From assembly GCA_002189035.1 (NCBI GenBank), contig NEEC01000023.1:682001-746000 (forward strand): 64,000 nucleotides of DNA, in the 5' to 3' direction. Shown here piece by piece: positions 9,401 through 61,082 of this stretch (positions are counted from its first letter, which is position 1; every line of letters begins with the position of its first letter). A program made the position numbers and the translations under genes. The notes beneath the pieces are model-generated. The model ran no database searches. It was not told the origin of the DNA and worked only from the letters and a program-made list of their open reading frames with translations. This DNA is from Utricularia gibba. Its lineage: Eukaryota > Plantae > Magnoliophyta.

Positions 9401-10259
9401 TAAAGTCACCACTTGGTTTTAAATTCGTCAGTCAGAACAAGGAAGTTTTCGAATAGGATGCTCTTTAAGAAATGGTTTAGGTAGTAAATTACCGACGAGT
9501 GCTGGTTTATGTCTTAAATCATTGTTAGGGAAACTGAAAAAGTGCTATCTTCACACTTGTATGCTTTTCGCTCAGATGTATAAGTAAATTATCTGCATTT
9601 TTTTTGTTTTACTTTTTGAAAAATATTTATTTATAATTTCTTAACAAGTAATCTTTGATTCATGTTATTTTAGCTTGTATTTTCTAGGATTATTTATACC
9701 TTTAAATATATGTATACATTGAGAATCATATTTTCTTATATATATTGTTTAGCATGTACGATATGTAAGATGGCTACCGAAAAATTTATGCTTGAGTTTC
9801 AATCAAATTATAAATTTTAGATAAATTATAAATTATAAAAAAATATTTATTTATAAATATAATGATATATTTATTTATAAAAAAATAAATATGTATTTCA
9901 ATCAAATTAAATTTCTTATTCAATTTTAGATAAATTATAAAAAAATATTTATTTATAATGATATATCTGGTAAATCAAGCGATGAATATGTAATTTTATG
10001 AGAAATATGCATTTGGTATACGTGTTTAAAAATGAAAATTTATAAATAAATTACTAAACAAAAATATTATTTGAGTTTATAGAAATTAATCTATTTTTAC
10101 CAAACATGGTTTAAAGAATAAATCTCCTTTTTCACCTACATATATTTTAAATAATTTAATATATGTATATGTTACACAATGTATATTTAATTTATTATAT
10201 GATATATGTTTATTTACATATGCATAGATAATCTATTTTAATAGACATAATTATAACCA

Positions 10260-11840
10260 GATTTTAAATTTTTAAACGATTCGCGAAAAGCCCACAACAA
10301 ACCCATAGAGCGCATGCATGTAGCCCATGTAAAAGATGAAATTGGATGCCATATTTCAAACGGCACAATGACATCCCCATGAGGAATCACATGTGAAAAT
10401 AGAGCCTTAGTAAACTCATGTTAACATGTCACCCCATAAAGAATCATATCTGGGCTTTCCATAAAATATAAAAGCCTCGCAATGACATATTTAAGCTCAT
10501 GATAATCATAAATGGGCACAGTTGGCCGACAACAAACCCATTGTTATTGCCCCAATAAGAAATTAACAGAGTTCACAAAAAACATATGAAATCTATTACC
10601 TCGGCCGGATGTTAGGCGGAGAACCGGAGTTTCTGTTCAGGCGCGCAGTTGATAAGGATGACCATAAAAAAAAAAAAAAAAAAGCTATCGGAACGTTGTA
10701 GCCGAACTAACAAAGCCCATTATTAACTTTGCTCAACTCCGACGTAGCACTTTTTTTTTTTTTTTTAAGAAGTGGCATTGGGCTCAAGTCCGACGTACCG
10801 CATTCCCTCTTTATCTTTCCACTACAAAACGTTACGCGGAAAGCAAAAGCGAGATACTGGTCGCTAAAGAGTCGCCACACAAGGATGAAATTACTAGAAA
10901 CAACCTAAATGACTTCGTAGAACAATTCATAATCACTAACCTGAGGGCAGATAACACATGATCAGCAAACTACATACTGAATTCATCATATAAACGCATG
11001 AACTATCTTTCGAAAATTCATAGTCACAAACCTAAATGCAGGTAGCATCTTGAACAAACTAGACCAAGAGAGTAGAGACTGCGGTCTGAATTGATCATGA
11101 AAACACAAGGACGCTGTTTTCAACCGAAATTCACCATTACAAAACTAAATCCACAGATCGCACCAAGGAAGAGGAACAGACCAGATCCATATACTAGTAT
11201 TTGAATCGATATCTAAAGCTCATGGAAGCGTTCGAATTAAGAAAAACGAAAACTATAATCTAGATTGCACAGACTGCATGACGAGAAGCGGATGCCGATA
11301 TAACTGGCGAATTTAATAACTCTCTAAAACATCCGTAAACCGGATACATATACCATACTATTGATCATCGGAAATCAAGGACGCGCTCCTTAAAAAAACG
11401 AAAGGCAGAATCCCAACCCTAAATCGCACAGATCGTACATACGGAAAACCAAATATCGACCGGAACAATTTAACTCATGTAACTGTTTCAAAACAAGATG
11501 CACCGATTGCATCTATACAAGGGAAACAGCGAAATGCATGCTAGTTCTGTACGACAGAATCACCAAAATCAGATCCAGAGACGACGACATTAATTTAAAA
11601 TCACTGATATTTCATAAAAAAAACTAATATACATACCGATTGACAAGGATCGGATGTGCAAATCTAGAGAAGAACGGAACCTAAGGAAGAGATGTAGTCA
11701 TGTAACTCCTAAAACATGCGCAGATCTGTTCGATTATAAGACGATTTCGCATGCTCACCGCGATCCAGAGATATTCTCCGCCCTGCACATCGATCGTATC
11801 GGAAGCATGGAGAAGAAGCTAAGAAGTTGCGAGGGAATGG
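10260..11840 (-). ncRNA. Candidate spliced transcript (lncRNA or 52-aa peptide gene), convergent with the 7845-9400 unit
   Basis: TATAAATA at 11871-11864, CT-rich exon 1, donor CG|GTGAGC at 11758, CTGAT branch-like site and CCCTCAG acceptor at 10941. Confidence 0.45.
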
Positions 11841-11863
11841 AATTTTTTTGAGTGAGGCGGTGG

Positions 11864-11871
11864 TATTTATA
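11864..11871 (-). promoter_or_regulatory. TATA box (TATAAATA) of the minus-strand spliced unit
   Basis: Exact consensus followed by a pyrimidine-rich leader and a GTGAG donor. Confidence 0.55.
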
Positions 11872-12202
11872 CGCACTTCCTCGCATATTCAGTCAACCTT
11901 TAAAAAATATTTAATTATGAATAATATTTGTTTACCATATTCTCTGATTTCGCATTTTTGTTTACACGTGTGTAAATGAATGATTCTATTTTTCCTATTT
12001 TATAATTTTTATATAAATTTTTTAAAGGTAATATTATTCTAAAATACATATATAAAATGATGCATCAAACATATTTTTAATTTTAATCATATATTTATTT
12101 AAATATAAATAGATTAAATAAAAGTTGAATTATATCATTACACAACTCTTTGTAGCGCGATTTTCTTCTGAGGCTTCATTTGCGACAGCTGAGTTTCCCG
12201 CC

Positions 12203-14996
12203 ATGGACGGAGCGCCGATGGAAACCGAAGCACTCCACCGTGAACAATCCTCTTACAATTCATTGGTAGGAGGATTTGTTTTGTTGGCCTCTATGCTGTG
12301 TTTATGCTCTGAATTTCTATTGTATCTGTGGTAGCTATGACTTTGTAGTTTCTACTTCGGGCGTTCTTTTTGTTTCTTTTCAGGATGAGAGTTTCGCGAT
12401 CGATAAAGAGATGTACAGAGGCCAACAGTTCAGTCAGATATATTTCGCGCGACTTCACCTGATGAGAACTCTACTTTACTCTCTTCTGCCAAATTGGAAG
12501 CCCCATCTGCCAGGTAAAATTCTAAAAGGGCGTTATTTTGTGGCAATCTCTATATATAATTTCTGGGTTTCTGCAAGTGATCATTTCTGTCTTTTCACAA
12601 GCATTCAAACCAAAGATGCAATTTTTGTGTGAGTGAATTACATTTTGGATATTACTAGTCTCTCCAGAGTCTTCTCTTGCGGTGTTACTTAGTCCACTGG
12701 CTAATAGTGGTGACTTGAACGGCTTTATAGATAAAACTTAGCATTAAGAGAAAATGGCGGGATTGCTTAAACAACTTGCTCTCAAAATAGAAGTAGAAGT
12801 AAAAGAAGAATAGTGACTCTTCAGGTTTTGATGGGTGTTTGAACGGTCCTTTTAACCTGGAAGTGCAAAAAGTATGTTTCTCTGTAATTGGCTTCTCAAA
12901 TTTCTTGTTTGTTGCAGTTTGCACTGTGCTTGGACTTGTAGAAGGAAAGGACTGCATTATTGTGGAACTCTCTTTAAGCACATGAAGCTCAAGCCTACAA
13001 TATTGGATGAATACTCAAAGGAGGTACCATGACTGTTTCTGATGTTTCAGATTTCCTAGCCTTTTCCTGGCCCAAGATTGCCTTCTATCTTGTGCATATC
13101 GCATTTCAGAGATCTGCAGTCCCACTTGTACAACCTCACAATTTCATACACTCGGATGATTATTTAACTTTGGAAGATGAGAGTGGAAGAGTTAAGCTCC
13201 GTGGGACTATTTTGCCGTCCAAATATGTGACAGGTATTCATCAGTGGGCCTGTGCATAAGTAGCTCCGATTTCTTTTAATGCCCATCTTAATGCTAAGAA
13301 AAAGTGCACCTGAACTTCATATTTAGTATAAACAAGGAACCCTTATGAGTACTCTTGCAGGTATAGTAGTTGCACTGCATGGAAAAGATACCGGAGAAGG
13401 AGATTTTTTGGTAGAGGATATTTTTGAAGCTGGCATACCTGATCAGATAGAGCGTCCGCTTACTCTGGGTAACTCTTCAATGTGTTTTGTGGTACTTGTC
13501 GATCCATAAGTACGGATCAAGTTATTCTTCAGTTTTATATGCTGATACGAAATGGAAATGTGGCACAGGTGAGGATAAGTTTGTCGTTTTTGTATCGGGT
13601 TTGAGGATTGGAAGCAGCTCTGTAAATCCTCTCCATCTTCAGCTTTTTGTGGACCATGTAACAGGGCATCTTGGGGATGAACAGGTTTCATTCCTCTTTA
13701 TCTGTGTTCCTCAAGACATTGCATTGTTGGTCTCTCTGATTTTCATCTTTTTCATGACGGCATCAGGAGCAAGCCATCGCTGCCAAAATTGTTCAGATTG
13801 TCATTGCTGGTAATTCCGTTGAGATTCCTCGTGTTCTCCTCGGTGGTCAGGTACTTTCAGAAACACGCTAACTCATCACTATAAGATGGTTTGTGCTGTT
13901 GTTAGTGATGCTCTTCAGTGCTGCATTGTTTTAGAATTTGGGTTCAAAGGATCATTCTGAACTATCCGAGCCCATAAAAGAGCTGGATATTGTTCTCACT
14001 CAGGTGCTAGTCATGCCTCCTGTGATGCATAAATCATTTAAGTGAAATGTTTTCACAGCATAGAGTGTTGCAGATTGTTGCAGGGGTGCCTCTGGACATA
14101 ATGCCAGGAAACAAGGACCCAGCGAATTTTTCTTTGCCACAACAGGTGCCCATTTCATTTATTTATCCACAGTGAACACAGAAAGTACTGAATTCAGCTT
14201 ATTTTTCCCCTCCAAGCCTTTGCATCGATGCCTTTTTCCTGGATCAAGAGCTTTTAACACCTTCAGATCATGCCCTAACCCTCATTCTTTCGAGCTAGAC
14301 AACGTGAGGTAAGATTATCCTTAAAAGGGAAGCATTTTCTATTCTTTTGAGCATTTTCTTGCCCTCACATATGTCTCCTTTATCAGGTTTCTCGGAACAT
14401 CTGGTCAGAACATTGATGACCTTGAGAAGTACAGCGATGCGGAAAGCAAACTTGAATTCATGGAGAGAACTTTGAAATGGAGGCATCTTGCACCAACAGC
14501 ACCGAACACTCTAGGCCTGTTATATTTAGCTGTGCATTACGAAACCTCATGGTTTCCTTTCTGACATGCATTTTGCTGCTGTCCAGGATGTTACCCTTTC
14601 ACTGATAGAGACCCTTTTTACATTGAGACGTGCCCTCATGTCTACTTCATCGGGAACCAAGACAAGTATGAGACCAGCATGATAAAGGGTATGTTTACCC
14701 TTTCACTACATGTGTATCGGTTTCGATACAAATATTCATGTTCACTCAGCAGAATAAGGTGACGGTGCAGGTTCTGAAGGGCAGGTTGTTAGACTCATCT
14801 GCATTCCTAAATTCGCAGAAACAGCAACTGCCGTTGTGGTGAGTTTCTGAAACCCGCGTATAATGCAAATAAGAAGGCCCTTTTTCTGTCCTTGTTCTCT
14901 CATCAACGTCCAAAATGCTGCTACATCATGCAGTTGAATCTTAGGAATCTTGAATGCCATGCTCTCAGTTTCGGAGCTAAGTTCGATTCATGGTGA
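12203..14996 (+). CDS. POLD2: DNA polymerase delta small subunit, multi-exon; 1-bp shortfall at GG 12964-12965
   Basis: [77 protein letters not shown] and [12 protein letters not shown] motifs across GT-AG exons. Confidence 0.95.
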
Positions 14997-15427
14997 ACAG
15001 GTACTGTACAATATATTTTGCAGTCACTTAGGAATCTTGGATGCCATACTCTCAGTTCCTTGGATCGCTGTACTGTAACACACGTTCATGGAAATCTTGG
15101 GGTAAAATGTTGTGGATATACCAGTTGCAAATTGATATGATAATGAGTTTGTGATCAATATGGGAACTCAAATCTGACCAAGATGAGCAAAATCTGTGCT
15201 ACATGTATCATCAACTGAGTCTGCCCCTTCACCAATTTTGAACCCCACCAGCTCTCAGTTTCTCGTGAATCTATCTCTACATTTTCGTTCAGTTACCAGC
15301 GTAAGATTTCCGCACCGCCGCCCCTTGAAGCCAGGGTATGACCCATGCTTTTCGATGACTCGATCGGAAGTTGCTAGGTTCGAGCCAACTGCAAGGATTC
15401 CATCCAGTGCCCAGAAGGTTAGAAGTG

Positions 15428-52951: not shown

Positions 52952-55071
52952 GAATCAGTTCACAGGAAACCAAAGATATTGTGTGTAGTCTAGTCAGCCC
53001 CCCTCACTGAGCCGTACACGACTTCTACTTACATGTGTATTCATGCAATAAGTAATGATGTACGAGGTTGAGCATTCGGTAACAGGATTTCCCACTCTCG
53101 ACCCTCACTAATCATACCGTGCTTGCCTTGATATCTTAACTTAGCACATAAGGGAAAGCTTTATTCAAGGAAGATGATGATGCGTAGAGAGAGAGGAGGG
53201 ATTCTCAGGTTAGTGCTTTCAGCCGAATGGTCGCATTCGGGTGCTTTCATTGGATGAGCATGCACATGAAGGGCCCTACTCCTCCAATACAAATACATAC
53301 ACAAATATCTTTACCCATTTGATTGGATGAGCGTCGCAAAAAGTTACAAAAAAAAAAAAAAGAACAGGGCTACTTTTTTGTACGACTAAACGAAAGAGTG
53401 GAAACAGAGTTACACTGTTTGTGGGAGTTTTGTTGTCGTTCATTTTTGTATGGTTTGGCTTCTGCTAAACCCCTTTTCTGTGGTCCTGAAATTTGGCCTA
53501 TAGCGCTGTTTAAGTAAAACAAGGCATGCGTCACGCATCAAAATTGAAACTGGTGAAGTTCTGCCTTGGTTTAACCATGCATCGTCACTGGGCCAATGAG
53601 CTCTTTAGTTATAGGGTAGAATCGGTGGTTCTTATTTTGAGGCCCCAAATCCGCCATCGCTCTCAAAGAAAGTCTGTTATGAGCCAAGTGTGTTTGTAGT
53701 GTATTGTGAACATGAGACTGAGATCTGTGGATACAGTTGTGAAGAGAGGTGGATCCTGCATGAGTTAACTGGAAAATGGACAGGACAGGAGATTTTTGAA
53801 GAGTAGAAAAATAAGGAGGAGGACCAGTTCATGACCTGCAGACGGGTTGTCATCCATGAGGTATTTCTACTCAAGGTGAATGTCGCAGAGGAAATCTGTG
53901 AAAAAGGCCTACACAGTCCAGCTGGGCCGACCGGTAGCCCCTGGAAATTCGAAGCATCAGTGAGTGAAACGACACATGTGCGTGCGGGCGTATGCCATTA
54001 CTCCTCAGTTCACTCACTCCCCTTGTCCCCATGGTGCATGTTCAAGGAAGTGTCGTGTGCATGGAAGACGCGGACGTGGACGCGGCCCGACAATTGTTCC
54101 CCATAGATTCATTCACCTGATTCTCTGGGAAGATGAAACCTGCCTGGCTGCTGCTGCTTAAACGCATCTTCCCTTTTCTTTCTTTCTTTTTTTTTTTCTT
54201 TTTCCGAAGGTAAAAGCAATGAATGATGTGTTACTCCTGGGGATTCGAATTTTGAATTTCACATGTGCTGAGGTGCCCCTGCAGGAGATTTTATTATTTT
54301 CCCATAAATAAAATGATATTAATCATCATCATCACAATGTCATCGGTCGAAACTAGTGGGAAGCCCAGCCGGGTAAGAGGAAAGGGCAAGAAGAGTTTAG
54401 GGTTTCTTTATTTACCCCACAGCCTCCATTGGCGCAATTCGCATCTCTTGCCCAATCCTTGGTGCGTCCGGACAAGAATGCGTGACAGTTATCTCGCGCC
54501 TTCTTTCCTATGGTTGCAAACTTCAATTGTTCCAAGTAATTTCCCAGGAGTGGTCCAGCCCGCAAGGGAGGATGTTGCATCCATTTGGACTAGTCAACTG
54601 CAATCCTTGTGCATGTCTACATGTTTTTCATGTGTGTTCTGTAGTCCCCCAGACGATAGTCTCTTTCAAGAATTGGTGGGTTTTTCATCTTTTTTTTTTG
54701 GTTCATCAGTATGTGCCGAAACATCTGATTTTGTTGAGTAGCCGGAAAGCACGTTACGTGCTTTTCTTCTGCTACCTTTTCTTCCTTGGGTGATCCGTTT
54801 AACGCATCCTGCTACGTTAAGGACTTGTTGCTCCTTCAGGATACTGGCTGATAGGCATTTGTGAGCCGTATGGGTATCTGAACCATGCTTAGAGAATTAA
54901 AGCTTCTGCTGCTGATGATTAGTAGTTTTTTTTTTTTTTCTCACGAAGCATTATTAGATCAGGTTTGGTGGCACTGCTTCCTTCACTGATCATTGTGTTC
55001 TATCTGCAGATTCAAACTTCATACATTCGCATGTGCTACTAGGAAAAGGGCTGCCAACACTCAGATGAATG

Positions 55072-56947
55072 CTATGATCTTCTCCTCTTTAAGCCCCACC
55101 ATTTCCACCGTTGTTTATCACCTTCATGCGGCCCCATTCGTCTTGCCCTTTCTCTGGCTTCTCTTAGCCGAAATCCAAAGTCTTTCTTCCATGCATCGAA
55201 CTTATGCTTGAGTGTCTGAACTTGCTCCAGAGGCTTTGGAGCAGATGGTGAATGCTTGGCCTCAACGATGGCTTGAGCTTCAAGATCAAAGAGCTGCTTG
55301 TGCTGCTCAAATTCATTAACGAGAGGAGCAACGGAATTCGAAGCAGACGCAGGAGTCTTGCTGTCTCGAAAGAGAATGTCCATGAATCTGACTGGCGAGC
55401 CACATCCTGGTGTCAAAGATCCCATAGATGTCTCTTCGGAATGAGGGGGTGACTGGGCTTCATATATGTGTTTTCGTAGTCCGTTTCCAGGATCCACAGG
55501 ATTCACTTTTGCTGTATCCAGTCTCATCTGCAAAAGCCAAAGAATTGCCTAAACCGGGTTGCAAGAGTTACAGAGGAGGGAAGTGACTTCTCCTACCTGT
55601 AGAAAATCTATCTTCTTTTGCCACATGTCCTCCATGGCCTTCATCTTGGACTCAAGATGACCAACTTGCTCCTTGAGAATTGTAATTTCCTTATCCCTTT
55701 CTCCAAGTGCTGTTTCCGCCATTAACACACGCCTTTGAAGTTCTTCAACAACCCCTGGTGCTGGAGGTGGCACATCCTGCTCCATTCACACAGAAGAAGG
55801 GTATCATTTGGGATGCTGCTTACACCCAAACCTACAATGTAATGGACATTTCTTAGGAATACTAACCTTGAACGGTGGTGCTGCTGGACTCTGTAGGCAA
55901 GCCAAAAGCTGCTGCCTTCTCACCAACCAACCACGAAGTACTGTAAAAGACAACATGGTGAGGGAAACGTTTACCCGATTCCCCAAAGCCGCTGCCTGCT
56001 ACAAGAACCTTACCAGACTGTATAAGCAGCACGGCTGCATCAGGCCGCTGATCACAATGTGACTTGCTACCATCCTCCGGCTTTCTCAAGTTTCGTCGGA
56101 TCTCCCTCCGTGCAATTTCACCGCGCACATCTGCAGAGTATTAGAAAGGATTTCTTCGGTCAAATAAAGGGGTGGACAGAAAGATTTAGCCTGTGATCAC
56201 CCTTACATGATTGCAATGTTGTTACTACTTCCTTCAGGTCATGAAATTCGCAATGTGCGTGAGGGGGAACTCGTCTTTCATCACTCTGTAAAACACCATC
56301 GGAAAGTTTTTGAAACACCGTGGATACGGACAGATCGAGACACAGAGATGATACTAGAAACAAAACAAGACTCCAACCCACTGTGCACAAACCATTAGAC
56401 CACAAACTGAACACTAAATAATGATGCAGATGATGCAAAAACATATGAAACTGGGCGATATTCGTGGCGTAATCTAGAGAAAAGAATCATGAATGTTTAA
56501 TTGTCGACAAAACAACATAGTGAATAGAGATCCAAGGAAAGATGAACGGATTACCAAAGGCCGGCAATATCCATTTTCATGTCTGGAGTCGCCGCCACCC
56601 GTAGCATCACAATCTGTTACTACTACAACTTCCTTCGGAGAAGCATTGGCTTCCTCCTGTGATTCCCCTGTCTCAATTTCCTTAGCCTGAAAACGGAAGA
56701 TACCTTTCTCCCACCCATTGCTCAAATCAGAACCTAATGGCCTCTGAGGAATGTCCGAATTTGCGGGAATGCAGCGCTTGGCAGACGACGGCGGCCGAGC
56801 CCGAGAATTAGGTTTGGGGCGCGCAGGAAGAGATGGGGGGTCGCAATTCTCGGGGTTTTCGAGCAACTTGTCCTTCCGCTGAAGAGACTCCAGCATTTCC
56901 TCCAAGGAACTACGAACGACAGGATTCGCGGAAACCGCAAACATCAT
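55072..56947 (-). CDS. Motor-less (headless) class VIII myosin-like protein: N-terminal extension + IQ motifs + coiled-coil tail, 6 exons, ~430 aa
   Basis: RSSLEEMLESL..PSLPARP..SRARPP N-terminus, IQ motifs LQSYVRGEIARR and IQSVLRGWLVRR, tail ELQRRVLMAE, MEDMWQKK, LKHKFDAWKKDFGFRLRE, KWWG. No motor-domain sequence in between. Confidence 0.85.
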
Positions 56948-57524
56948 GTCCAGATTCACCAGTTCGCGTCAACGAAATCCCACACCACTTTAAACTGGAA
57001 AAGGCAACAGAAATAGAGAACGGGAACCCCACATGAATGGATTAATGAGCGCTCCCAAAAGGAGCAAAATAAAGAAACTGAGAGCAGCGAAGTGGGGGAG
57101 GAGCATGCCCGCCACCTAAAAGCACAATCTTTGTCGCGTAACACAAGGAAGCAGTGGGGACAGCAACAGCAAACTCAGATCAATCGGACAGCGAAGTGAC
57201 TAAATAAAGAGCAACGAAATCAGTCGCCGTGCTTCAAGAACTTGCTCTTTTCATCATCCATGGCGGCAGCCGGCCGATAAACCCAGAGAAATCGAAAACG
57301 GAACACGTTGGCAGATTTGCGACCGAAGCTGTCCCAGAAAACAGTTTCTAACAAAATTATCCTCTTAATTATTCAGAAATTACGATTTTCTTAGCACGCT
57401 ACCCGTCCACACACGTCACAGGGTAGTTTGGGAAATCCAGCCCGGCTCCACGCTATCTATCAAAAAATTTCTAAGGAATTAAATTGAAAATCAAAAGTTT
57501 TTGGATTCGACTCAATTTTTAGAA

Positions 57525-57560
57525 AAAAAAATTAAAAATTAAAAATTAAAAATTAAAATT
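57525..57560. repeat. (AAAAATT)n short tandem repeat, about 4-5 units
   Basis: Read directly from the sequence. Confidence 0.7.
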
Positions 57561-58000
57561 TCTAAATTCAAAATTCAATTAAATAAAAAAAATGAATTTA
57601 ATTTATTTTTAAAGTAGAAGATTTTAGGACAAGGTCACGAGGGTCAGGTTGGCCGCCGTCCACACTTGTCCGTATTCAAAATTCGAACGCCCACGTGATT
57701 TCATTATCTATTTATTTATCAAATTTGACATAAATAACATGATTTAATAATCAGAAATAAAATTTACGGTATTTCCAATGGATTTAATCTGCTTCTAATT
57801 TTTAAATTGTTTAATTAAAATATAATTCACAATTTTAAAATTGAGAATGCGAAAAGATCCGTTTTTTAAAATCCCATGCTCTCTCCCTGGAGTCGTCAGG
57901 CACAGCCACACCAGCGATGTGGACGGGACGGGAGTGTTGTCTTTTGAGATGATCTTCGTCATCATCATTAGCACGAATGCACCTTGGGCTCCCCATCCCT

Positions 58001-60521
58001 TCACCTGCCTCGTGGGTTTACGAGTTGAGTGAAGACGGCGCTAGTGTCTGCATCTTCACCGAGTAAAGCAGCGTGTCGTTGCTGGGTTTCTTCTTCTTCG
58101 ACTAAACTCACGCCGCTGTTCTCATAAAGGGGGACTCCCATGATGTGATTCGTACTGTCATCGAACTCGTCCCTGTCCTTGAGGGCGGATGATGTCTCCT
58201 CCAGCTGCAGAGCATACTCCAGGTTCCACAGAACGTCTCCCATGGAAGGCCGATCGACGCTCTGATCCGCTAGACATTTCTTAGCCGTCTCCCCGAACTT
58301 CCTCAGAGAAGCTATATTCACTTTGCCGATAAGATTTCTGTCCATGATGTGCTCCAGCATTCCCTTTTTCTCCCAGCTCATTGCCCATTCCGCAATGTTC
58401 ACTTGATCTCTAGGGAGCACAGGGTTCAGAGCAGGCCTCGTGCAGACGACTTCCATCAGGACGACTCCGAATGAGTAGACGTCCGACTTCTCCGTCAGCT
58501 GCTGCCGCCGGAAATACTCGGGATCGAGATAGCCAAAGCTGCCCTTCACAGCAGTGCTTACGTGTGTCTGATCGAGGGACGGCCCTGTCTTCGACAGGCC
58601 GAAATCGGCGACCTTTGCGACAAAGTTTTCGTCCAGGAGGATGTTGGTGGTCTTTACATCACGATGGATGATGCTTTGAGGTCCTCCGGTGTGGAGATAA
58701 TGGAGCCCCGCGCGGCACCAATGCAAATCTCAAGGCGCTGCTTCCACGACAGTGGAGGGAGATCAGTGCCGTACAGATGGCTCCGAAGAGGGCCATTGGC
58801 CATGTACTCGTACACCAGTATCATCTCCAACCGCTCATCGCAATATCCGATGAGCGAAACGAGGTGGCGATGGCGAAGCTTCGACAGCATTTCTATCTCG
58901 GTTCGGAACTCTGCAAGTCCTTGTTCTGACCTTGGATTGCCTCTCTTGACGGCAACCTTCGTGCCACCTTCGATGGTTCCTTTATATACCCTTCCAAAAC
59001 CACCAACGCCAAGAAGCAAGCTTTCGTCGAACTTGTTGGTCGCATCCATTATCTCTTGGAATGTGAAGAAACGACCGAAGCTGGAGGGAGGAGCTGAGGA
59101 GTTGCAGCTCGGGGTGCCGCCCTTCTGTGGAGTGGTTGACATTTTTGTGACAGTGGAGGAGTTCCCATAGAAGGGAAGAGGAAGCCATGAATCCCGATGG
59201 GGCTCCTTAGACCTTCTAACCACTAAGCAAAGGCAACAGAATCCTGCCATCACTAACGCTGTGACAAGAGCCACAAAGGCAACAAGTATGCCCCTACTAG
59301 CGGCCTTGTGTGGCGACTGGAGAATAGCCTCCACAGCCTGAGATCCACTCAAGCTTCTAGCTCCATTGCTGATCTTCATGATCTCCAAACCATTCATGAT
59401 TGCATTGATCGAATCGCTGTTCGTATCCGGCCCAATGCTCACAGTTAGCGCATTTGAGCCAGCTGCAACTTTGGAGACAAAATCTCTGTAATATGGTGTG
59501 TCAAAATTCCCAGCAACATTCGACAAATCCAAGCTCCCAATGGCGATGTCAGTGTTGATGTAAACGTTGAATATCAGATCATTCAGCGATTTGCTCACAA
59601 TGTCACAAAAATGGACTCTCAACAAGTACAAGTAGCCTGGTTCAACAGGCAAGATCCAAGTGATGTTGAAGTTCACATTCACAACATCAGCATCCCCCAT
59701 GGTTTCTGCCGTGGCGTAAATGTAGTTTGGAGCTACTTCAGCTGAAACAGAACCGTATTTTATATCTGACGGATCGACGGAGACATTCACAGCAGCAGTG
59801 TTCATATGTAGATACTTGCCATCATTCTCCCATCTCCTTCCCAAAGTATCATTCTGAGGAGTGATCAAAGGACCCCCATATTCAAACGGTACACAGTCTC
59901 GAGTGCAAGGCTAGAGATTCCATGAAAAGAACCAAATGGAAACACTGTGATTGCCTGGTCAGGAATCAAGCTATTTGGAACAGATACAACTTCAATGGCA
60001 TTAACAAAAGCAGGTGAATTTTCCCCTGGAATGAACACAATAGACAAGGTATTGGAAGTCACGTTGATTGCATACTCCTTAAAAAGGTAAGAATCATTGT
60101 AACTCTGAAAACTGAAGTCGCGCAGAAGCACAAATTTCCCAGCAATAACGCTGATCGAAGAAGAAGACAGATTGTGGCCAGGGATGAGGTAGAAATGAAG
60201 GCGAATCCAATGCCGACCTTGCTGCTGAATATGGAATCTATAGGAAGTTGTGCTTGTAAAAATCCTTGCAGACTCAAGGATAGAATGTGGGGCTGTTGCG
60301 TTAGAAGTAACAGCCATAGAATTCCCTTGGGTCTTCATAGAAAACAAGGATTGGGCTGAATCTGGAGTGTAAATCTGACCAAGAAATGTCACATTTCGTG
60401 AAGATCCACAAGCAAGCAAATAGTTATCAGCAGGAACGAACGCAGCAAAGGATATATTACATTTCAGATAACCAGCGAACAATACGACTACAAGAGCAGG
60501 CGCCCACTTCCCTATTTTCAT
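58001..60521 (-). CDS. THE1: CrRLK1L receptor-like kinase (malectin-like ectodomain), THESEUS1-like, intronless; 1-bp shortfalls at 59873-77 and 58706-09
   Basis: FVPADNYLLACGSS, ETVYRLNMG-GPLITPQNDTLGRRW, NAIMNGLEIMKISN, TM helix, GVGGFGRVYKG, AVKRGNPRSEQGLAEFRTEIEMLSKLRHRHL, HRDVKTTNILL, DFGLSK, HVSTAVKGSFGYLDPEY. Confidence 0.93.
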
Positions 60522-61082
60522 AGCTGCTGGCTCAATCGAGAAAATGAATGACAAGAAAACCCAAAAACATGAGCGCCAAGAAGAGCCCACTACTTCCCAG
60601 ATACAGCTCCCGCTACAGATTGATGCTAAATGCCAGAAACTAAGAAATAACTCCCAGATCTACATTACGGCAATGCTGTTTCGGAGTCATTATACAACTG
60701 CTAACGTATAGCAGCACAGCTCATCGCTGTTCAGAAAAAGGATCGAGCTTTGTAGCAAAAGAAAGCCAGCAATAAAGACCCAAGCGATGAGGTGCATTTG
60801 AGCGCCACTACGTGACACCAACACTAGTATAGATGACCGGAAAACGCGTTTCCGCCATTGAGCAAACTCGTACGGCCGCAAAACCAAACATTTATGATGC
60901 AAACTAAAACCAAACTACCCCACGATCGTGATTAGCTGTCAAAATGCTCAGCAACTGGGAAAGTGAAGTTTGAAGACAAAACAAACAAAAAGAACACTTC
61001 ACTAAAAAAAAAACTGAAACTTCAATCTCCAGAAAGCTAGAGACTTAAATAAAAAAAAAGTCATATCTACCGTTTACAATCA

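What the first reader, a model, noticed from the sequence alone, without database searches (positions are those of the whole stretch)
55072..56947. Cleanly spliced 'headless' class VIII myosin: N-terminal extension joined directly to IQ motifs and tail
Seen: exon 1 (56947-56555) encodes the myosin VIII-B/ATM2-type N-terminus (SSLEEMLESL, PSLPARP, SRARPP) and ends at a phase-0 GT donor. After one ~270-bp intron, exon 2 (from 56285, phase-0 acceptor) starts just before the IQ region. Exons 3-6 give IQ motifs, a coiled coil and the conserved KWWG tail, with no stop or frameshift. Known: class VIII myosins carry an SH3-like domain and a ~700-aa actin-activated ATPase between these parts, spread over many exons, and expressing myosin tails alone acts dominant-negatively in plants. 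The headless derivative I recall (Arabidopsis HDK) is class XI. Inference: an exon-precise deletion produced a ~430-aa calmodulin-binding, cargo- or dimer-competent but motor-less protein. It could be a natural inhibitor or scaffold for myosin VIII at plasmodesmata or the cell plate. I cannot tell from here whether similar short models exist in other species.
Basis: partly seen in the sequence, partly recalled or inferred. Interest (0 to 1): 0.8.

Follow-up and report, generated by a model that had tools for sequence, protein, structure and literature searches.

The report
Expressed motor-less class VIII myosin gene
This plant (probably the bladderwort Utricularia gibba) has an actively transcribed, correctly spliced gene for a class VIII myosin that has lost its whole motor but keeps both ends; similar unstudied genes occur in many flowering plants and may naturally regulate the full-length motor.

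Summary
On the minus strand, six GT..AG exons (56947-55072) give a 432-aa open frame. RNA contigs from three studies show all five introns removed exactly as predicted. One 1791-nt contig spans the whole mRNA, including the exon1-exon2 joint.

The protein is the single-exon N-terminal MyTH8 extension joined directly to two IQ motifs, a coiled coil and the WW-motif tail. About 707 residues (SH3-like domain plus motor) are missing, and no motor remnant lies anywhere in the window.

Several results argue against decay:
- 26 of 29 family-invariant tail positions are kept.
- Non-synonymous divergence (pN about 0.3) is far below synonymous divergence (pS about 0.7).
- The tail evolves no faster than its Genlisea sister.
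- The three RNA variants that could be placed in codons are all synonymous.

It is not unique. About 70 motor-less class VIII proteins were found in asterids and monocots. Genomic loci in Salvia, Abeliophyllum and Sesamum were checked and carry no motor exons. One asterid-wide clade contains only headless members. The bladderwort gene lies outside that clade, inside the Lamiales myosin-2/VIII-B group.

No paper in the searched library describes natural headless class VIII myosins. This scan already noted another headless class VIII myosin on another piece of the same genome. Function as a regulator or tether is inferred, and translation is unproven.

The parts
56948..57321 (-). 5' UTR (374 nt) with upstream ATGs opening three distinct uORFs (13, 7 and 38 codons) that all stop before the main ATG
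   Evidence: The RNA contigs of runs X1 and X2 end at 57321. uORFs were listed.
56555..56947 (-). Exon 1, 131 codons: the whole N-terminal MyTH8 extension (SSLEEMLESL, PPSLPARPKPNSRARPP). It ends at the native phase-0 donor.
   Evidence: In the full-length Striga gene, exon 1 is aa 1-131. MyTH8 is encoded by a single exon according to PMC3850447.
56286..56554 (-). Intron 1 (269 bp, GT..AG). It sits where about 15 exons encoding the SH3-like domain and motor lie in full-length genes. It holds no motor remnant and is retained in a minority of RNA contigs.
   Evidence: The joint 56285|56555 was seen in runs X1, X2 and X5. Intron-retaining contigs cover 56257-56584. tblastn with P0002 finds nothing here.
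56207..56285 (-). Exon 2 (79 nt): a degenerate remnant of IQ1 and the first half of the second IQ motif. It is 26 codons long against 43-44 in relatives.
56014..56130 (-). Exon 3 (117 nt): completes IQ motif LQSYVRGEIAR (aa 155-165) and starts IQ motif IQSVLRGWLVR (aa 194-204)
   Evidence: joints
55867..55940 (-). Exon 4 (74 nt): the end of the last IQ motif plus a linker
55597..55776 (-). Exon 5 (60 codons): the coiled-coil segment. 12 of 15 a/d positions are hydrophobic. One exact heptad (7 aa) is deleted relative to relatives.
55072..55527 (-). Exon 6 (151 codons plus stop): the class VIII C-terminal tail with the conserved helices and the WW motif (RWKWWG)
   Evidence: the WW motif is described in PMC3850447
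54954..55071 (-). 3' UTR (about 118 nt)
   Evidence: The RNA contig of run X2 ends at 54954

Best explanation
This is a real, independently transcribed gene for a 432-aa headless class VIII myosin of subtype B. The single-exon MyTH8 N-terminal extension is spliced straight onto the neck (two IQ motifs), the coiled coil and the WW-motif tail. The exons for the SH3-like domain and the whole ATPase/actin-binding motor (about 707 residues) are gone from the DNA.

Shown: the gene structure, the splicing, the transcription, the absence of motor DNA, and sequence constraint on the retained parts.

Inferred: the protein is made, binds calmodulin-type light chains through its IQ motifs, and dimerises through its coiled coil. 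Having no motor, it would act as a natural competitor or regulator of full-length myosin VIII. It could form one-headed or non-motile heterodimers, and it could occupy tail- and MyTH8-binding sites at the plasma membrane, plasmodesmata or cell plate. Experimentally over-expressed myosin VIII tails act in this way.
For: - **Structure and frame:**
- **Transcription and splicing:** all five introns are removed at the predicted sites in four RNA runs from three studies. One 1791-nt full-length contig matches with no mismatch.
- **No motor DNA:** the N- and C-terminal parts align to a full-length Striga myosin VIII with aa 132-838 missing, and there are no motor hits anywhere in the 64-kb window.
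- **Subtype:** the tree places it in the Lamiales myosin-2/VIII-B clade (96/91), sister to a Genlisea tail (100/99).
- **Constraint:**
  - It keeps 26/29 of the tail columns that are at least 90% conserved but only 20% of the variable ones.
  - pN is 0.30-0.44 against pS of 0.64-0.76, giving rough omega of 0.14-0.34.
  - It is not faster than the Genlisea sister (chi-square 0.2-0.8).
  - A neutrally drifting copy would keep its frame open in only 8% of simulations at 0.05 substitutions per site and 1.3% at 0.1.
  - The three RNA variants listed by position in the coding sequence are all synonymous, while intron 1 has 7 differences in 309 nt.
- **Motifs:** two strict IQ matches, and a coiled coil with an exact one-heptad deletion.
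- **Family context:** the same architecture recurs in about 70 proteins. These include a headless-only asterid clade and verified compact loci in Salvia (2.7 kb), Sesamum (2.0 kb) and Abeliophyllum.
- **Mechanistic precedent:** expressed class VIII tails inhibit myosin-dependent processes, by cargo sequestration and/or non-functional heterodimers (PMC4199776).
Against: - No protein-level evidence exists.
- The 374-nt 5'UTR has three uORFs that could limit translation.
- The first IQ motif has degenerated, and exon 2 has lost about 18 codons.
- The branch is long and the amino-acid composition is unusual. Synonymous sites are saturated, so omega values are rough.
- No orthologue with a known headless state was recovered in close relatives. 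The Genlisea sister is cut by a contig end.
- The best-studied natural headless plant myosin, HDK (class XI), shows no discernible phenotype (PMC3850447).
- A dominant-negative action at native expression level is not established for any plant myosin.
Confidence: 0.6

Rival explanations
1. Motor-independent scaffold or tether. The protein does not act on full-length myosin VIII at all. It has kept, or specialised in, a job that needs only MyTH8, the IQ motifs and the tail, for example anchoring a partner at the plasma membrane or plasmodesmata, or buffering calmodulin.
For: Both non-motor ends are retained and constrained. The same N-terminus-plus-tail combination is kept in every headless lineage found, including an old asterid-wide clade. 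The one-heptad deletion and the loss of IQ1 could mean divergence away from pairing with the full-length protein.
Against: No partner of the MyTH8 domain is known from this work. The coiled coil that mediates dimerisation is still conserved. Sequence data cannot separate this reading from the regulator reading.
Confidence: 0.2
2. Transcribed relic. This is a duplicate that lost its motor and is still spliced and open by chance or recent origin, with no protein function. The RNA is either noise or acts only at the transcript level.
For: The branch is long and the composition odd. IQ1 is degenerate, exon 2 is shortened and the leader is rich in uORFs. Intron-1-retaining RNA is present. The neighbouring receptor-kinase gene is itself broken. 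The genome is known to be deletion-prone (background knowledge). The maize short O1 transcript gave no detectable protein (PMC3935558).
Against: The lineage is at least as old as the Utricularia-Genlisea split, yet the frame and all ten splice sites are intact. Survival of the frame under neutrality is 1.3% or less at 0.1 substitutions per site. Conservation follows the family profile. pN is far below pS. The rate equals that of the Genlisea sister.
Confidence: 0.15
3. Assembly artefact. The motor exons exist in the real genome but were collapsed out of the assembly between 56285 and 56555.
For: None found.
Against: Independent RNA data sets contain the spliced junction. They also contain unspliced contigs that cross the whole 269-bp intron identically to the assembly. 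One of these comes from a divergent strain with 7 SNPs. Full-length mRNA contigs contain no motor sequence.
Confidence: 0.01

Closest known systems
Full-length class VIII myosins, subtype B (Arabidopsis ATM2/myosin-2 type; nearest here: Striga asiatica GER54508.1, Sesamum and Handroanthus myosin-2)
   Same: It shares the single-exon MyTH8 N-terminal extension, IQ motifs, coiled coil and C-terminal WW motif. Intron positions match in the retained part. It is placed inside the Lamiales VIII-B clade.
   Different: It lacks the SH3-like domain and the entire motor (about aa 132-838 of the Striga protein). It has two IQ motifs instead of three or four, and one heptad fewer in the coiled coil.
Headless class XI myosins: Arabidopsis HDK/Myo11E2 and Poales Myo11E4 (PMC3850447)
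   Same: Both are natural, separately transcribed genes derived from a myosin by loss of the motor exons, with intron positions of the tail retained.
   Different: The class is different (XI, with a DIL cargo domain). Those forms lack the original N-terminus, and HDK also lacks the IQ motifs. Here the original first exon is kept and joined in frame to the neck. PMC3850447 lists only these two headless types, both class XI.
Uncharacterised database models of motor-less class VIII proteins ('myosin-2-like', 'myosin-1-like', 'hypothetical protein'), e.g. Salvia divinorum P0061, Abeliophyllum P0133, Sesamum indicum P0218, Apium P0044, Cornus P0124, Musa, Zingiber, Dioscorea
   Same: They share the MyTH8-IQ-coiled coil-WW architecture and are colinear end to end with the window's protein. 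The loci checked contain no motor exons.
   Different: Identity is only 24-38%. The window's gene is excluded from the old asterid headless clade (AU p = 0.007). Common origin with the other Lamiales headless genes is neither shown nor rejected (p = 0.09-0.28). No neighbouring genes are shared.
Headless myosin X (Hdl-Myo10) of vertebrate brain (PMC6345916)
   Same: It is a naturally expressed motor-less form of a myosin that keeps neck and tail.
   Different: It is an animal protein and an alternative transcript of the full-length gene rather than a separate gene. The tail domains are unrelated.
Experimental myosin VIII tail constructs used for dominant-negative inhibition (PMC4199776)
   Same: They have the same retained part (neck, dimerisation and tail, about 40 kDa). 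This is the model for how the natural protein could act.
   Different: They are artificial, over-expressed and lack the MyTH8 N-terminus.

Membership tests
Class VIII myosin (Myo8) | Myosin motor domain (Pfam PF00063), on which myosin classes are defined | tested here: not met
   No Pfam hit on the exons tested. tblastn with the full-length Striga protein finds no motor segment anywhere in the window.
Class VIII myosin (Myo8) | N-terminal SH3-like domain (PF25369) | tested here: not met
   Absent. The alignment jumps from aa 122-131 to aa 838 of P0002.
Class VIII myosin (Myo8) | N-terminal MyTH8 extension encoded by one exon | tested here: met
   Exon 1 aligns to aa 3-122 of P0002 and carries the SSLEEML and PP.LPARP motifs. 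The Striga exon 1 is aa 1-131. The definition comes from PMC3850447.
Class VIII myosin (Myo8) | Three to four IQ motifs | tested here: inconclusive
   Two strict IQ matches at aa 155 and 194; IQ1 is degenerate. Calmodulin binding was not tested.
Class VIII myosin (Myo8) | Coiled coil followed by a tail ending in the WW motif | tested here: met
   The tail hits class VIII tails (best E = 3.6e-25; best full-length hit 4.5e-23). It ends in RWKWWG. The heptad pattern is 12/15.
Class VIII myosin, subtype B (myosin-2/ATM2 type) | Phylogenetic placement of the tail with subtype B sequences | tested here: met
   It sits inside a clade with Striga, Sesamum and Handroanthus myosin-2 and potato VIII-B (96/91 and 96/94 support). 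No subtype A reference was included.
Natural headless myosin derivatives (HDK/Myo11E2, Myo11E4 type) | A separate gene with its own transcript, derived from a myosin, with the motor exons absent from the DNA | tested here: met
Natural headless myosin derivatives (HDK/Myo11E2, Myo11E4 type) | Class XI origin with DIL cargo-binding domain | tested here: not met
   The tail is class VIII.
Asterid-wide headless class VIII clade (Cornus, Nyssa, Sesamum indicum, Coffea, Ericales) | Membership of that clade in the tail tree | tested here: not met
   The free tree places it elsewhere. The AU test rejects the union (p = 0.007).
Functional dominant-negative or regulatory myosin tail | Protein is made, dimerises with or competes against full-length myosin VIII, and binds calmodulin | not testable with these tools
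   Only RNA and sequence evidence is available.

The most novel reading that the evidence does not exclude
Headless class VIII myosins (MyTH8-IQ-coiled coil-WW tail) are an overlooked, recurrently evolved class of natural myosin VIII regulators or tethers, and in asterids an anciently conserved one. The join of exon 1 to the first IQ exon keeps the reading frame in full-length genes too. Each headless gene may therefore be a hard-wired copy of an exon-skipping isoform, fixed after duplication. The bladderwort gene would be one expressed, constrained member of a Lentibulariaceae lineage.
Probability: 0.35. Interest if true: 0.7.

Novelty: new variant of a known kind. Interest (0 to 1): 0.55.

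Why it matters
Class VIII myosins work at plasmodesmata, the cell plate and the plasma membrane. They are usually studied by over-expressing their tails as dominant-negative inhibitors. A natural, expressed and constrained gene that encodes such a tail plus the uncharacterised MyTH8 N-terminus suggests plants may use this trick themselves.

The same architecture appears in many asterids and monocots, including an old headless-only clade. None were found in rosids among the proteins recovered here, which would include Arabidopsis, though no targeted search was made. That could explain why it has not been described. It offers a direct handle on two open points: what the MyTH8 domain and the class VIII tail bind, and whether motor-less partners tune motor activity. 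It is also a clean example of domain loss producing a new gene type in a genome known for DNA loss.

Tried and rejected
- **Own protein in the databases.** It was never returned. The spliced protein has no reference, so only exon pieces, relatives or a mixed alignment could be used as queries. No close Utricularia orthologue was obtained.
- **Pfam on exons 1 and 6:** no family. On exon 5 there were only sub-threshold coiled-coil hits.
- **Synteny.** ORFs from the Striga, Sesamum, Handroanthus, Abeliophyllum, Salvia and Genlisea loci hit nothing in the window except the myosin exons. The position gives no orthology evidence.
- **'TLQSYVRGEIARRE' as a shared derived mark** of the Salvia and bladderwort headless genes: rejected, because full-length Striga has nearly the same motif.
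- **Single origin of all headless genes:** rejected for this gene against the asterid clade. A single core-Lamiales origin is not rejected but also not shown.
- **dN/dS:** only rough, because synonymous sites are saturated.
- **Earlier notes of this scan, by sequence and by relatives:** blank. The other headless copy noted in this genome could not be fetched for comparison.
- **Coffea protein P0276:** has no locus on record.
- **Structure prediction:** not run. The spliced protein cannot be passed by reference, and the tail alone was judged uninformative.

Full report
**1. What is in the sequence**

Reading the minus strand of 54500-57600 and assembling the six proposed exons gives 1299 nt in frame, a 432-aa protein. 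The exons are 56947-56555, 56285-56207, 56130-56014, 55940-55867, 55776-55597 and 55527-55072. Every intron has GT..AG ends. Exon 1 is 131 codons and ends in phase 0. Intron 1 is 269 bp, and exon 2 starts in phase 0.

**2. Is it transcribed and spliced that way?**

Eleven RNA runs were listed for the stretch, nine of them from one organism and holding it. Four runs from three studies were laid on 54400-57700.
- All five joints lie exactly at the predicted exon ends: 55527|55597, 55775|55866, 55940|56014, 56130|56207 and 56285|56555.
- Run X2 holds one 1791-nt contig that covers 54954-57321 with all five introns removed and no mismatch.
- This gives an mRNA with a 374-nt 5'UTR and a 3'UTR of about 118 nt.
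- Depth is zero outside 54954-57321, so the transcription unit stands alone.
- Lower-depth contigs cross the unspliced intron 1 (56257-56584). They are identical to the assembly in X1 and carry 7 SNPs in a divergent strain (X5). This rules out a collapsed assembly at this spot.

**3. What the protein is**

- Exon 6 alone finds 121 proteins in the 1.84-billion-protein library. All those examined further are class VIII myosins or fragments of them.
- The best full-length hit is a Striga asiatica myosin (P0002, 1169 aa).
- Local BLAST of the spliced protein aligns aa 2-142 to P0002 aa 3-122, and aa 126-431 to P0002 aa 838-1169.
- In the Striga gene, exon 1 encodes aa 1-131 and the first IQ exon encodes aa 839-881.
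- The literature says the N-terminal 'MyTH8' extension of class VIII myosins is always a single exon, and that the tail ends in a WW motif (PMC3850447).
- So the window's gene is MyTH8 plus neck, coiled coil and WW tail. The SH3-like domain and the motor (about 707 residues) are missing.
- tblastn with P0002 finds no motor piece anywhere in the 64-kb window.
- Exon 1 ends at the native donor ('GY' plus four residues, as in 'GYFIEK' of relatives).
- Exon 2 is only 26 codons, against 43-44 in Striga and Abeliophyllum. The first IQ motif is degenerate.
- Two strict IQ matches remain (LQSYVRGEIAR at aa 155, IQSVLRGWLVR at aa 194).
- The coiled-coil segment has hydrophobic residues at 12 of 15 a/d positions. 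It lacks exactly one heptad compared with all relatives.

**4. Constraint or decay?**

Five results point to constraint.
- Across 136 family tails, the protein keeps 26 of 29 columns that are at least 90% conserved. It keeps 59% of the 70-90% columns, 44% of the 50-70% columns and 20% of the variable columns. Its many changes therefore avoid the positions the family protects.
- On exons 5-6, non-synonymous differences to six Lamiales homologues are 0.30-0.44 per site. Synonymous differences are 0.64-0.76, which is saturated. Rough omega is 0.14-0.34.
- The partial Genlisea aurea protein EPS62979.1 (P0001) is its sister with 100/99 support. It shares lineage-specific motifs (SMGSLTPGCG, RWKWWGLK.RR). 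Much of the long branch is therefore common to Lentibulariaceae. Tajima's relative-rate counts show no excess on the bladderwort side (21-25 against 18-21 unique changes, chi-square 0.2-0.8).
- Simulated neutral drift leaves the frame open in 8% of runs at 0.05 substitutions per site and in 1.3% at 0.1. The lineage is far more diverged than that.
- The three RNA variants listed by position in the coding sequence are all synonymous (K372, D271, E263). Intron 1 shows 7 differences in 309 nt.

Caveats:
- Omega is only rough because synonymous sites are saturated.
- The end branch is long (1.2 changes per column) and the composition unusual.
- The 5'UTR has uORFs of 13, 7 and 38 codons.
- There is no protein evidence.

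**5. It is not alone**

Many proteins of 350-560 aa are colinear with this one from the first to the last residue and have only IQ Pfam hits. About 70 such N-terminus-plus-tail proteins without motor were counted. They come from asterids and monocots.
- Asterids: Salvia (two types), Abeliophyllum, Sesamum indicum, Apium, Daucus, Heracleum, Ilex, Cornus, Nyssa, Camellia, Actinidia, Rhododendron, Diospyros, Bertholletia and Coffea.
- Monocots: Musa, Ensete, Zingiber, Canna, Dioscorea, Typha, Iris and Ananas.

Three genomic loci were checked.
- The Salvia divinorum gene spans 2.7 kb.
- The Sesamum indicum gene spans 2.0 kb.
- The Abeliophyllum gene spans 5.1 kb.

None has motor exons in the gene or within 10 kb. 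Only Abeliophyllum has a weak possible relic of the last motor exon inside its first intron (tblastn E = 0.01). Complete transcripts also exist (P0107).

**6. One origin or several?**

A careful tree of 57 tails shows two patterns.
- One is a headless-only clade with 100/100 support. It contains Cornales, Ericales, Heracleum, Sesamum indicum and Coffea, and is sister to a motor-bearing Tetracentron sequence.
- The other is the ordinary asterid VIII-B clade. Here headless lineages are nested among motor-bearing sequences of the same order: Ilex beside Ilex, Camellia beside Sarracenia, an Apiaceae group, Abeliophyllum, two Salvia groups and the bladderwort gene.

The tree needs at least 6 changes of state on well-supported branches.

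AU test results:
- The bladderwort gene does not join the old headless clade (p = 0.007).
- A common origin with the Salvia-type headless genes is not rejected (p = 0.24-0.28).
- With Abeliophyllum added it is borderline (p = 0.09).

Two biases should be noted. The length window of the word-based search hides full-length proteins. However, partial motor-bearing models are common in the ordinary clade and absent from the headless-only one. Gene conversion between headless and full-length copies could also mimic repeated origins.

**7. Position in the genome**

Full-length VIII-B genes of Sesamum angustifolium and Handroanthus are followed by a chlorophyll a/b-binding protein gene. So is the headless gene of Abeliophyllum. 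The window has no such neighbour and shares no flanking gene with any fetched locus. Whether the bladderwort gene sits at the ancestral place or is a moved duplicate remains open.

**8. How it probably works**

Over-expressed class VIII tails inhibit myosin-dependent processes. The accepted explanations are cargo sequestration and non-functional heterodimers (PMC4199776). The natural protein keeps the dimerisation and tail parts, the light-chain sites and the MyTH8 domain.

The most likely reading is a motor-less competitor or regulator of full-length myosin VIII (confidence about 0.6 for the whole statement). A motor-independent tether is the main alternative. A functionless transcribed relic is less likely (about 0.15).

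Earlier notes of this scan say full-length class VIII genes exist elsewhere in this genome. I did not check them.

**9. Known or new?**

- The broad survey of plant myosins lists two natural headless types, both class XI (PMC3850447).
- The maize survey adds a short class XI transcript (PMC3935558).
- Six full-text searches found no paper on natural headless class VIII myosins, and none on Utricularia myosins.
- The library lacks most subscription journals, so this is not proof of absence.
- The database models carry only generic names.
- This scan has already noted a headless class VIII myosin on another piece of the same genome, with a similar follow-up reading. That DNA could not be fetched here.

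**10. Organism**

An earlier follow-up suggested Utricularia gibba. The 100/99 sister relation to Genlisea aurea, the Lamiales placement and the very compact genes fit this. The identity was not otherwise verified.

Noticed in passing
window 58001-60590 (minus strand): The neighbouring malectin-like receptor kinase (THESEUS1/CrRLK1L type) is split over three overlapping ORFs in different frames. One break falls in the conserved YRLN.GG stretch near 59868 and one in the kinase domain near 58654-58726. It is either a pseudogene with two frameshifts or two indel errors in the assembly.
   Followed up: partly
window 56948-57321 (minus strand): The 374-nt 5'UTR of the headless myosin mRNA carries five upstream ATGs forming uORFs of 13, 7 and 38 codons. 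This could throttle translation of the main ORF.
   Followed up: partly
window 56257-56584: A minority of RNA contigs retain intron 1. Read through, this gives a 161-aa product consisting of MyTH8 only, or is simply pre-mRNA.
   Followed up: no
L002 (Abeliophyllum distichum CM091612.1) 10001-15085: The headless gene here lies next to a chlorophyll a/b-binding protein gene, like the full-length VIII-B genes of Sesamum (L005) and Handroanthus (L006). Its 1.5-kb first intron has a weak tblastn match (E = 0.01, 11401-11463) to the last motor exon, a possible relic. It looks like an in-place loss of the motor exons.
   Followed up: partly
Proteins P0124, P0090, P0261, P0218, P0276, P0265, P0083, P0130, P0233, P0239-P0241, P0249; locus L007: An asterid-wide clade of class VIII tails contains only motor-less members (100/100 support). 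It is sister to a motor-bearing Tetracentron sequence. The Sesamum indicum member is a 2-kb gene between unrelated genes. This suggests a headless lineage about as old as the asterids.
   Followed up: partly
Proteins P0061/P0142/P0145 versus P0209/P0210/P0242/P0173: Salvia species carry two quite different headless class VIII genes that are about 34% identical. The second type has also lost the middle of the tail.
   Followed up: no
L001 (Genlisea aurea KE532416.1) 70-818: The sister of the window's tail is cut by the contig end after 219 residues, so its head state is unknown. It lies beside a Sec23/Sec24-type gene that has no counterpart in the window.
   Followed up: partly
Protein P0050 (orchid transcript) versus P0087/P0208 (Platanthera full-length): A motor-less orchid transcript is 87% identical in the tail and 74-78% in the N-terminus to full-length Platanthera myosin VIII. 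It is joined exactly at the native exon borders. It could be an exon-skipping isoform of a full-length gene or a recent headless duplicate.
   Followed up: no
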